From: Octopus sinensis
Lineage: Eukaryota
NCBI RefSeq assembly: GCF_006345805.1
Contig: NC_042999.1
Coordinates: 143,840,001 to 143,904,000 of the forward strand
DNA length: 64,000 bases
Reading direction: 5' to 3'
Positions 57,759 to 57,864 of the stretch are shown in pieces (the first letter of the stretch is position 1; the number at the start of each line of letters is the position of its first letter). The notes beneath the pieces were generated by a model. That model was not told where the DNA came from. It was given only the letters and a program-made list of their open reading frames with translations, and searched no databases. A program made the translations under genes and the position numbers.

Positions 57759-57864
57759 ATCACCTGACGAGACACATCTGCACCGACGGATGCTTCCGAA
57801 TCAGTTGTTAAGTGTCTCACCCGTATGGGATCGATGCTAGATGGGTCGAAACAAATGTCGTGAT
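57759..57864 (+). ncRNA. Type I hammerhead ribozyme motif with long stem II
   Basis: ATCAC-CTGACGA-GACACATCTGCACCGA...TCGATGCTAGATGGGTC-GAAA-CAAATG-TC/GTGAT. 5-bp stem I, about 14-bp imperfect stem II, minimal stem III, GUC site after 57859. Confidence 0.85.

What the first reader, a model, noticed from the sequence alone, without database searches (positions are those of the whole stretch)
57759..57864. Sense-strand hammerhead inside the presumed aminopeptidase intron
Seen: an intact core on the gene's strand, 7.8 kb after the donor at 49948, with no intervening exon recognised. Seven of the other eight motifs in the window are on the minus strand. Established: intronic self-cleaving ribozymes exist in animals (CPEB3 HDV-like; conserved amniote intronic hammerheads). 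Inference: if active it would cut the nascent pre-mRNA and could affect splicing or output; its minimal stem III may keep it slow or dimer-dependent. The strand bias rests on small numbers.
Basis: partly seen in the sequence, partly recalled or inferred. Interest (0 to 1): 0.7.

Follow-up and report, generated by a model that had tools for sequence, protein, structure and literature searches.

The report
Lone hammerhead-like motif in octopus DNA
A complete hammerhead ribozyme core really is present at this spot in an Octopus vulgaris-type genome, but it is a single weak copy, most likely left by a retroelement next to a microsatellite, and nothing shows that it lies in the aminopeptidase transcript or regulates it.

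Summary
The motif is real at 57759-57864 (+). It has a perfect type I hammerhead core (CUGACGA, GAAA, GUC^G), a 5-bp helix I, a 2-bp helix III and predicted cleavage between 57859 and 57860. It is sub-threshold: Rfam Hammerhead_1 gives 20.2 bits against a cut-off of 34. Helix II is a 77-nt branched domain. The hammerhead fold lies 9.3 kcal/mol above the minimum-energy fold, because a 7-bp competing helix sequesters G8 and A9. It still beats chance at window level: a strict descriptor expects 0.03 hits per shuffled window, and only 3% of long-span chance hits fold this well. No second copy was found, and only a 99%-identical assembly was available for comparison. All five hammerhead motifs in the window lie 46-224 nt upstream of a microsatellite, which fits Penelope-like elements. 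The window encodes the NCBI O. vulgaris model 'aminopeptidase N-like' exactly. That model's coding sequence ends at 50275, 7.5 kb before the motif, and no further M1 exon occurs up to 64000. Intronic placement is therefore unproven. The most likely reading is a solitary retroelement-derived hammerhead relic with little or no activity. Interest is low.

The parts
57759..57763 (+). Helix I, 5' strand (ATCAC). An imperfect A/T extension is possible at 57751-57757.
   Evidence: Pairs with 57860-57864.
57764..57770 (+). Catalytic core, first part: C3 U4 G5 A6 C7 G8 A9 (CTGACGA).
   Evidence: Read from the sequence; Rfam RF00163 alignment.
57771..57847 (+). Helix II, a 77-nt domain. The basal rod is GACACATCTGCA / TGC(T)AGATGGGTC, about 11 pairs with one A.G mismatch and one bulged U. 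The apical part is branched.
   Evidence: Manual pairing and constrained ViennaRNA fold. The rod form of helix II alone is -21.8 kcal/mol against an MFE of -22.2.
57848..57850 (+). Catalytic core, second part: G12 A13 A14.
57851..57858 (+). Helix III: A15.1-U16.1 and C15.2-G16.2, 2 bp, with loop AAAU. The sequence ACAAAUGU is only partly palindromic.
57859..57860 (+). Predicted cleavage site: C17 (57859) ^ G1.1 (57860).
   Evidence: Position relative to the core. No cleavage assay was possible.
57860..57864 (+). Helix I, 3' strand (GTGAT).
57812..57818 (+). GTGTCTC, a perfect 7-nt complement of GAGACAC (57769-57775). This competing helix sequesters core residues G8 and A9 in the minimum-energy fold.
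   Evidence: MFE fold -35.2 kcal/mol against hammerhead-compatible fold -25.9. The hammerhead-compatible share of the ensemble is about 2e-7.
57452..57909 (+). A 458-nt non-repetitive island that carries the motif near its 3' edge. The motif is 49% G+C; the rest of the island is 34%.
   Evidence: TRF blocks; G+C content; no other copy in the window, L002 or L003.
57359..57451 (.). Microsatellite flanking the island on the left.
   Evidence: TRF.
57910..58052 (.). Composite (TA)n/(CA)n/(TG)n/(TGTA)n microsatellite that starts 46 nt after the motif.
49157..49947 (+). First coding exon of an M1 (aminopeptidase N-like) gene: N-terminal tail, membrane anchor and the start of Peptidase_M1_N. The donor GT is at 49948. 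The public model also removes 49296-49391 as a small intron.
50239..50275 (+). Terminal coding exon of the public 243-aa model (..SRRNKTDVKQQL*). AATAAA lies at 50401.
   Evidence: The spliced translation equals P0001 exactly.

Best explanation
This is a solitary hammerhead of the metazoan type I, short-helix-III kind. It was most likely carried in by a retroelement, and a Penelope-like element or a non-autonomous derivative is the best candidate. It now sits as a relic at the 3' edge of a 458-nt island that abuts a (TA)n microsatellite, in transposon-rich DNA downstream of aminopeptidase exon 1. In the source element such a ribozyme is thought to trim long or tandem element transcripts at GUC^N. 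In this copy, RNA made across the site by intronic transcription or read-through could cut itself between C57859 and G57860, leaving a 2',3'-cyclic phosphate and a 5'-OH. Cleavage is expected to be slow or absent for four reasons. Helix III has only 2 bp. No second copy is nearby to form the dimeric active form. The 77-nt helix II cannot give the loop-loop contact that makes natural hammerheads fast. A 7-bp competing helix ties up G8 and A9. Shown: the motif, its statistics, its predicted folding, its genomic context and the public gene model. Inferred: the retroelement origin, the weak activity and the lack of a regulatory role.
For: The core and all three helices are present. The strict descriptor finds 1 motif against 0.0275 expected. 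The relaxed descriptor finds 3 in the window against 0.20 expected, with P(>=3)=0.0025. Its hammerhead fold is far closer to the MFE than in chance hits of similar span: a gap of 9.3 kcal/mol against a median of 17.1, with only 2.9% of chance hits at or below 9.3. The motif is a G+C-rich patch, 49% against 34% in its flanks. All five hammerhead motifs in the window have a microsatellite 46-224 nt on their 3' side, whereas random positions reach <=224 nt only about 22% of the time and <=45 nt only 5% of the time. Penelope-like elements (PLEs) carry hammerheads near their 3' ends and insert preferentially into microsatellites (PMC8557442). The pair at 6415-6455/6739-6780 has the inverted arrangement and palindromic helix III described for PLE hammerheads (PMC4209133). 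PLE hammerheads occur mostly as single copies from truncated elements, have a 4-5 bp helix I, an enlarged helix II and a tiny helix III, and cleave poorly in vitro (PMC4209133). PLEs are one of the six transposon orders annotated in O. vulgaris (PMC13282606).
Against: No other copy of the 458-nt island or of the motif was found in the window, in two paralogous loci or in JGI metagenomes. Family membership is therefore unproven. No reverse transcriptase or GIY-YIG remnant lies nearby. A 77-nt helix II is far longer than the 7-8 bp reported for PLE hammerheads. The Rfam score is below threshold. Extrapolated to a genome of about 2.7 Gb, tens of equally good motifs would arise by chance. An intact core after a long residence would be unexpected for a neutral relic, so the copy is either young or not a relic.
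Confidence: 0.5

Rival explanations
1. Chance match. The 11 core nucleotides and short complementary stretches arose at random in a very large, repeat-rich genome, and the RNA has never been a ribozyme.
For: Rfam gives 20.2 bits against a gathering score of 34. 71% of chance descriptor hits have long helix II spans like this one. The hammerhead fold is 9.3 kcal/mol above the MFE, and folding of the region is only modestly better than shuffles (z = -1.85; helix II alone z = -0.74). No relatives were found. Scaling 5e-4 to 3e-3 expected per window to about 42,000 windows predicts tens to about a hundred such motifs genome-wide.
Against: At window level the expectation is 0.03 or less, and about 0.003 or less once the quality of helix II is counted. 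Hammerhead motifs are about 15-fold enriched in this window. The motif shares the 3' microsatellite association of the other motifs. It is a G+C-rich patch.
Confidence: 0.3
2. It belongs to a retroelement that is still active, or was recently, and is transcribed from its own promoter. It is used for processing that element's RNA, independently of the aminopeptidase gene.
For: The core is perfect, as expected for a young copy. O. vulgaris has 31 recently active PLE families (PMC13282606). The island is bounded by microsatellites like the other hammerhead-bearing units in the window.
Against: There is no open reading frame, no second hammerhead and no terminal or tandem repeat within the island. 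No copy lies elsewhere in the window. A single site cannot release a unit-length RNA.
Confidence: 0.12
3. One reading: a functional sense-strand intronic ribozyme that cuts nascent aminopeptidase pre-mRNA and tunes the output of full-length mRNA against the truncated isoform.
For: It is on the same strand as the gene. A 243-aa product cannot be a peptidase, so a long isoform with exon 2 beyond 64000 is plausible, and the first introns of two paralogues also exceed 10 kb. Precedents exist: amniote HH9/HH10 (PMC3088659) and the CPEB3 ribozyme (PMC10919898). The competing helix could in principle act as a switch.
Against: The only public model ends 7.5 kb upstream, and no downstream exon is in the window. 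Two paralogous loci have no hammerhead in the first 10 kb of the corresponding intron. There are no informative conservation data. Predicted folding disfavours the active form. From my own knowledge of engineered ribozymes placed in introns, slow ones have little effect on splicing.
Confidence: 0.05

Closest known systems
Minimal type I hammerheads of Penelope-like retroelements (Cervera & de la Pena 2014, PMC4209133)
   Same: Consensus core, a 4-5 bp open helix I, an enlarged helix II without loop-loop contacts and a 1-2 bp helix III. They occur mostly as scattered single copies and cleave poorly on their own. The elements favour microsatellite targets (PMC8557442).
   Different: Helix II is 77 nt and branched rather than 7-8 bp. 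[quoted passage not shown] The helix III sequence is only partly palindromic. No PLE coding remnant or pseudo-LTR was identified, and no family copies were found.
Metazoan retrozymes: tandem 170-400 nt repeats with type I hammerheads (Cervera & de la Pena 2020, PMC7229834)
   Same: Type I hammerhead, low-G+C surroundings, short helix III, and a unit of a few hundred nt.
   Different: It is not tandemly repeated and only one ribozyme is present, so no unit-length or circular RNA can be released.
Conserved intronic hammerheads of amniotes, HH9 (RECK) and HH10 (C10orf118) (PMC3088659; Rfam RF02275, RF02277)
   Same: A hammerhead on the sense strand downstream of a splice donor of a protein-coding gene.
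   Different: Those lie in annotated introns, are conserved across orders, have compact helices with stabilising tertiary contacts, and cleave efficiently. None of these features is shown here, and neither Rfam family matches.
CPEB3 HDV-like intronic ribozyme (PMC10919898)
   Same: The proposed logic: self-scission of a nascent intron competing with co-transcriptional splicing.
   Different: It is a different ribozyme class, it is conserved in mammals, and its activity and effect on mRNA have been measured.
Discontinuous hammerhead of rodent Clec2 3'UTRs (mentioned in PMC3088659)
   Same: A hammerhead core interrupted by a very large insertion in one helix.
   Different: The insertion is in helix I rather than helix II, the motif lies in a 3'UTR, it is conserved among paralogues, and it is experimentally active.

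Membership tests
Hammerhead ribozyme, type I (Rfam RF00163) | Conserved core: C3 U4 G5 A6 N7 G8 A9, G12 A13 A14, A15.1-U16.1, and H17 not G | tested here: met
   CTGACGA at 57764-70, GAA at 57848-50, A57851-U57858 and C57859.
Hammerhead ribozyme, type I (Rfam RF00163) | Three helices around the core, helix I open-ended, G10.1-C11.1 closing helix II | tested here: met
   Helix I 5 bp. Helix II 3 bp, one mismatch, then 8 more pairs. Helix III 2 bp.
Hammerhead ribozyme, type I (Rfam RF00163) | Covariance-model score at or above the curated gathering score (34 bits) | tested here: not met
   20.2 bits. No match at gathering in the whole window.
Hammerhead ribozyme, type I (Rfam RF00163) | The active fold is the favoured or a near-favoured secondary structure | tested here: not met
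   The hammerhead-compatible fold is 9.3 kcal/mol above the MFE, and G8 and A9 are paired in the MFE. Nearest-neighbour energies ignore tertiary stabilisation.
Hammerhead ribozyme, type I (Rfam RF00163) | Site-specific self-cleavage | not testable with these tools
   Needs an in vitro transcription and cleavage assay.
PLE-associated minimal hammerhead | Lies in the flanking repeat of a Penelope-like element, or in a recognisable truncated copy of one | tested here: inconclusive
   No reverse transcriptase or GIY-YIG remnant in the window. Truncated copies without coding sequence are the common case (PMC4209133). No PLE consensus from octopus was available to compare.
PLE-associated minimal hammerhead | Helix I 4-5 bp, helix II about 7-8 bp, helix III absent or 1-2 bp with a palindromic loop | tested here: inconclusive
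   Helix I (5 bp) and helix III (2 bp) fit. Helix II is 77 nt, and the helix III sequence ACAAAUGU is only partly palindromic.
PLE-associated minimal hammerhead | Member of a multi-copy sequence family | tested here: inconclusive
   No second copy in 64 kb plus 42 kb of other loci and JGI metagenomes. No octopus genome could be searched.
PLE-associated minimal hammerhead | Element end adjacent to a microsatellite target | tested here: met
   (TA)n starts 46 nt 3' of the motif. All five motifs in the window lie within 224 nt of one.
Metazoan retrozyme | Head-to-tail repeats of 170-400 nt, each with a hammerhead | tested here: not met
   No tandem or nearby direct copy.
Conserved intronic hammerhead (HH9/HH10-like) | Located within an intron of the host transcript, on the sense strand | tested here: inconclusive
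   The strand is the same as the gene's. The public model's coding sequence ends at 50275, and no downstream exon occurs up to 64000.
Conserved intronic hammerhead (HH9/HH10-like) | Conserved at the orthologous site across species | not testable with these tools
   Only a 98.7-99% identical O. vulgaris assembly could be fetched. The motif is identical there, with 2 differences in 471 nt around it.

The most novel reading that the evidence does not exclude
The motif is a working sense-strand intronic hammerhead with an unusually large, branched helix II. Its 7-bp competing helix acts as a folding switch, so that regulated self-cleavage of nascent RNA in a first intron longer than 14 kb helps decide between the truncated 243-aa isoform and a full-length aminopeptidase. 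This would be the first host-gene regulatory hammerhead outside amniotes.
Probability: 0.04. Interest if true: 0.65.

Novelty: new member of a known kind. Interest (0 to 1): 0.2.

Why it matters
If this is a retroelement relic, it adds one more example to the thousands of scattered type I hammerheads already described in invertebrate genomes. Its practical value is a caution: in octopus genomes, intact hammerhead cores next to microsatellites are probably transposon debris. They should not be read as gene regulators without evidence from transcripts and from conservation. It would matter only if the site proved to be transcribed within the aminopeptidase pre-mRNA, conserved among octopods and catalytically active. 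In that case it would extend host-gene intronic ribozymes beyond amniotes.

Tried and rejected
1. Rfam at gathering threshold over the whole window found nothing. A permissive scan of 1-5900 did not list the 1855-1906 motif at all, so Rfam's hammerhead models are insensitive to these minimal variants.
2. I looked for other copies by blastn of 57401-58300 and 57451-57905 against the window, L002 and L003. Only microsatellite matches came back.
3. I translated the motif region (minus frame) to fish for spurious ORFs from other copies in the 5.8-billion-protein database. No candidate was found.
4. Two exact-pattern scans of JGI metagenome contigs gave 0 hits.
5. I used the window's LINE reverse transcriptase as a hook to sample more octopus DNA. 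The hits were 45-60% identical proteins from unrelated assemblies, so this was useless for the purpose and cost the last protein search.
6. The paralogous loci L002 and L003 share no transposon families with the window and are therefore not close relatives. They contain no hammerhead motif.
7. I searched for M1 exons downstream by motif regex and by tblastn with 11 full-length relatives. None was found.
8. I searched for PLE coding remnants by motif regex and by Pfam on stop-free segments. None was found; only a LINE RVT_1 domain and transposase fragments appeared.
9. A tRNA-like SINE head near the motif was not found.
10. The supplementary files of the PLE paper are not held.
11. I considered and rejected a tandem or dimeric arrangement, because there is no second core with helices on the + strand within several kb.

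Full report
**What the window is.** The window matches chromosome OX597816.1 of Octopus vulgaris assembly GCA_951406725.2 at 98.7-99% identity over 39508-60213. Splicing 49157-49295, 49392-49947 and 50239-50275 reproduces the NCBI protein 'aminopeptidase N-like [Octopus vulgaris]' (P0001, 243 aa) residue for residue. The sequence therefore comes from O. vulgaris or a member of its species complex.

**The observation.** The + strand at 57759-57864 reads atcac-CTGACGA-(77 nt)-GAA-acaaatgt-C^gtgat.
- Every invariant hammerhead position is present: C3-A9, G12-A14, A15.1-U16.1 and C17.
- G10.1-C11.1 closes helix II, and C15.2-G16.2 follows the A-U pair of helix III.
- Helix I has 5 contiguous pairs, with further A/U pairs possible beyond a mismatch. 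Helix III has 2 pairs and loop AAAU.
- Rfam's Hammerhead_1 model aligns over its full length (1-45) with a 63-nt insertion in loop II. It is the only family matching 57700-57900 at E<=10.
- The score is 20.2 bits against a curated threshold of 34, and nothing in the window reaches any Rfam threshold.

**Is it more than chance?**
- A strict descriptor (helix I >=4 bp, II >=3 bp, III >=2 bp, helix II span <=110 nt) finds only this motif. It finds 0.0275 per dinucleotide-shuffled window.
- A relaxed descriptor finds three motifs (this one, 15492-15559 on the minus strand and 1855-1906 on the minus strand) against 0.20 expected, with P(>=3)=0.0025.
- Long helix II spans are what chance produces most often: 71% of chance hits have them. 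I therefore asked how well the hammerhead fold competes in such hits.
- For 174 chance hits with spans of 50 nt or more, the hammerhead-compatible fold lies a median 17.1 kcal/mol above the MFE. Only 2.9% are within 9.3 kcal/mol, which is the value for the real motif.
- The reason is that the 5' and 3' ends of the 77-nt segment form a long rod, GACACAUCUGCA/UGC(U)AGAUGGGUC, with one A.G mismatch and one bulge.
- The motif is also a G+C-rich patch: 49% against 34% in the rest of its island, placing it in the top 6% of 106-nt windows.
- At window level it is unlikely to be random, at roughly 0.003 expected or less. Across a genome of about 2.7 Gb, tens of equally good accidents are still expected, so statistics alone do not settle the question.

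**Would it work?**
- The minimum-energy fold does not contain the hammerhead. GAGACAC (57769-75, including G8 and A9) pairs perfectly with GUGUCUC (57812-18), and G5-C7 pair with 57859-61.
- The hammerhead-compatible fold costs 9.3 kcal/mol more, and its share of the ensemble is about 2e-7.
- The competing partner is transcribed before the true 3' strand of helix II, so co-transcriptional folding also favours the inactive form. This last point is inference.
- Fast natural hammerheads need a contact between loop II and helix I, and lengthening helix II by even one pair lowers activity (PMC3088659). A basal rod of about 12 bp cannot supply that contact.
- A 2-bp helix III is the feature that makes newt, schistosome and PLE hammerheads slow as monomers and dependent on a second copy (PMC4209133, PMC7229834).
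- No second copy or other structured core exists on the + strand nearby. I therefore predict slow or no cleavage. This is inference, not measurement.

**What it belongs to.**
- No other copy of 57401-58300 exists in the window or in two paralogous loci from other assemblies.
- A search with the translated region and two metagenome pattern scans found nothing. No octopus genome could be searched with these tools.
- The context is nevertheless informative. The motif lies near the 3' edge of a 458-nt island (57452-57909) between microsatellites, and a (TA)n tract starts 46 nt after it.
- The other hammerhead motifs in the window are placed the same way. All five have a microsatellite 46-224 nt on their 3' side. 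Random positions achieve <=224 nt about 22% of the time and <=45 nt 5% of the time.
- The pair at 6415-6455 (-) and 6739-6780 (+) sits in 105-nt inverted arms that are 90% complementary, inside a 690-nt island between (TA)n blocks. Its helix III sequence, ACTGACGTCAGT, is a perfect palindrome.
- These features match published descriptions of Penelope-like elements: hammerheads in the flanking repeats near the 3' end, inverted truncated copies, a microsatellite insertion bias, mostly solitary motifs from truncated copies and low activity (PMC4209133, PMC8557442).
- PLEs are one of the six transposon orders annotated in O. vulgaris, whose genome is 66% repeats (PMC13282606).
- The surrounding 14 kb is transposon debris. 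It contains LINE-like fragments at 53.9-55.9 kb (read by eye only; Pfam found no family in those segments) and a transposase helix-turn-helix remnant at 61207-61473 (HTH_32, E=1.2e-7).
- Points against a simple PLE assignment are the lack of any PLE coding remnant in the window and a helix II ten times longer than reported for PLE hammerheads.

**Relation to the aminopeptidase gene.**
- 49157-49947 encodes the cytoplasmic tail, membrane anchor and first ~130 residues of the Peptidase_M1_N domain. It ends at a good donor (AAG|GTAAGA) at the same point where full-length relatives continue with YLAATQ...FPCFDEP.
- tblastn with 11 full-length relatives finds only this exon in the window, and conserved M1 motifs are absent from all six frames.
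- The public model instead joins the donor to a 37-nt terminal coding exon at 50239-50275, behind a strong polypyrimidine tract and followed by AATAAA at 50401. Under that model the motif lies 7,484 nt beyond the stop codon.
- A 243-aa product cannot be a peptidase, so a long isoform with exon 2 beyond 64000 (intron >=14,053 nt) is plausible. Two paralogous loci also show no exon 2 within 10 kb. This could not be verified, and those paralogous introns contain no hammerhead.
- The motif is identical in the second assembly, but so is nearly everything around it (2 differences in 471 nt). That comparison is uninformative.

**Verdict.**
- The most likely explanation (about 0.5) is a solitary retroelement-derived type I hammerhead relic with little or no activity and no demonstrated link to the aminopeptidase transcript.
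- A chance match remains a serious rival (about 0.3).
- Use by a still-active element is less likely (about 0.12), and a true regulatory intronic ribozyme is unlikely (about 0.05).
- This is a new member of a known kind, of low interest unless genome-wide, cross-species, transcript and cleavage data say otherwise.

Noticed in passing
window 6351-6455 and 6738-6842 (cores at 6415-6455 minus strand, 6739-6780 plus strand): Two near-identical minimal hammerhead motifs (CTGATGAGGCAAYGRAAATTGCCGAAACTGACGTCAGT) lie in 105-nt inverted arms that are 90% complementary. The arms sit inside a 690-nt island flanked on both sides by (CA)n/(TA)n/(TGTA)n microsatellites. Helix III (ACTGACGTCAGT) is a perfect palindrome and helix I has only about 2 bp. 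This looks like a Penelope-like inverted insertion.
   Followed up: partly
window 1855-1906 (minus strand): A compact hammerhead motif with a perfect 8-bp helix I, a bulged U at the 5' end of a 3-bp helix II and a 4-bp helix III. Its hammerhead fold is only 3.3 kcal/mol above the MFE. It was not listed by a permissive Rfam scan.
   Followed up: partly
window 15492-15559 (minus strand): A third complete hammerhead motif, with a 6-bp helix II closing a 30-nt loop, a 3-bp helix III and a 3-bp helix I. A microsatellite lies 167 nt on its 3' side.
   Followed up: partly
window 49296-49391: The public 243-aa model removes a 96-nt GT-AG intron from inside the first coding exon. This deletes the predicted membrane anchor (GNQAGAGCYVTRLQVGLFLFLILLTTIFIALI). 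Reading through it gives an uninterrupted 264-codon frame that resembles the N-termini of full-length relatives more closely.
   Followed up: partly
protein hits to window 49157-49948: The 1.84-billion-protein library holds 1,365 relatives (E<=0.001) of this exon. Most of the top hits are 220-280 aa proteins that end exactly at the exon 1 boundary. They appear to be first exons of a large aminopeptidase N-like family called as separate genes on eukaryotic contigs filed as metagenomes.
   Followed up: no
window 34836-35549 (minus strand): An open 237-aa reverse transcriptase fragment (Pfam RVT_1, E=8.6e-26) of a LINE element. Its closest database relatives are only 45-60% identical.
   Followed up: partly
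window 61207-61473 and 61571-61732 (plus strand); also 4810-5169: Remnants of DNA transposases: HTH_32 (E=1.2e-7) at 61207-61473, and a weak Transposase_1 match (E=0.0045) at 4810-5169. Pfam found no family at 61571-61732, which I read by eye as a mariner-like C-terminal end.
   Followed up: partly
window 28603-28706 (plus strand) and 29538-29641 (minus strand): A pair of about 100-nt near-identical inverted segments roughly 830 nt apart, each containing a bare CTGACGA...GAAA core without hammerhead helices. They are probably the terminal inverted repeats of a transposon.
   Followed up: no
window 22694-22793: A run of 100 N, which is an assembly gap.
   Followed up: no
window about 48719 versus L001 9045-9562: The GCA_951406725.2 assembly carries about 517 nt here that the window lacks. 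This is an insertion/deletion difference about 440 nt upstream of the aminopeptidase start codon.
   Followed up: no
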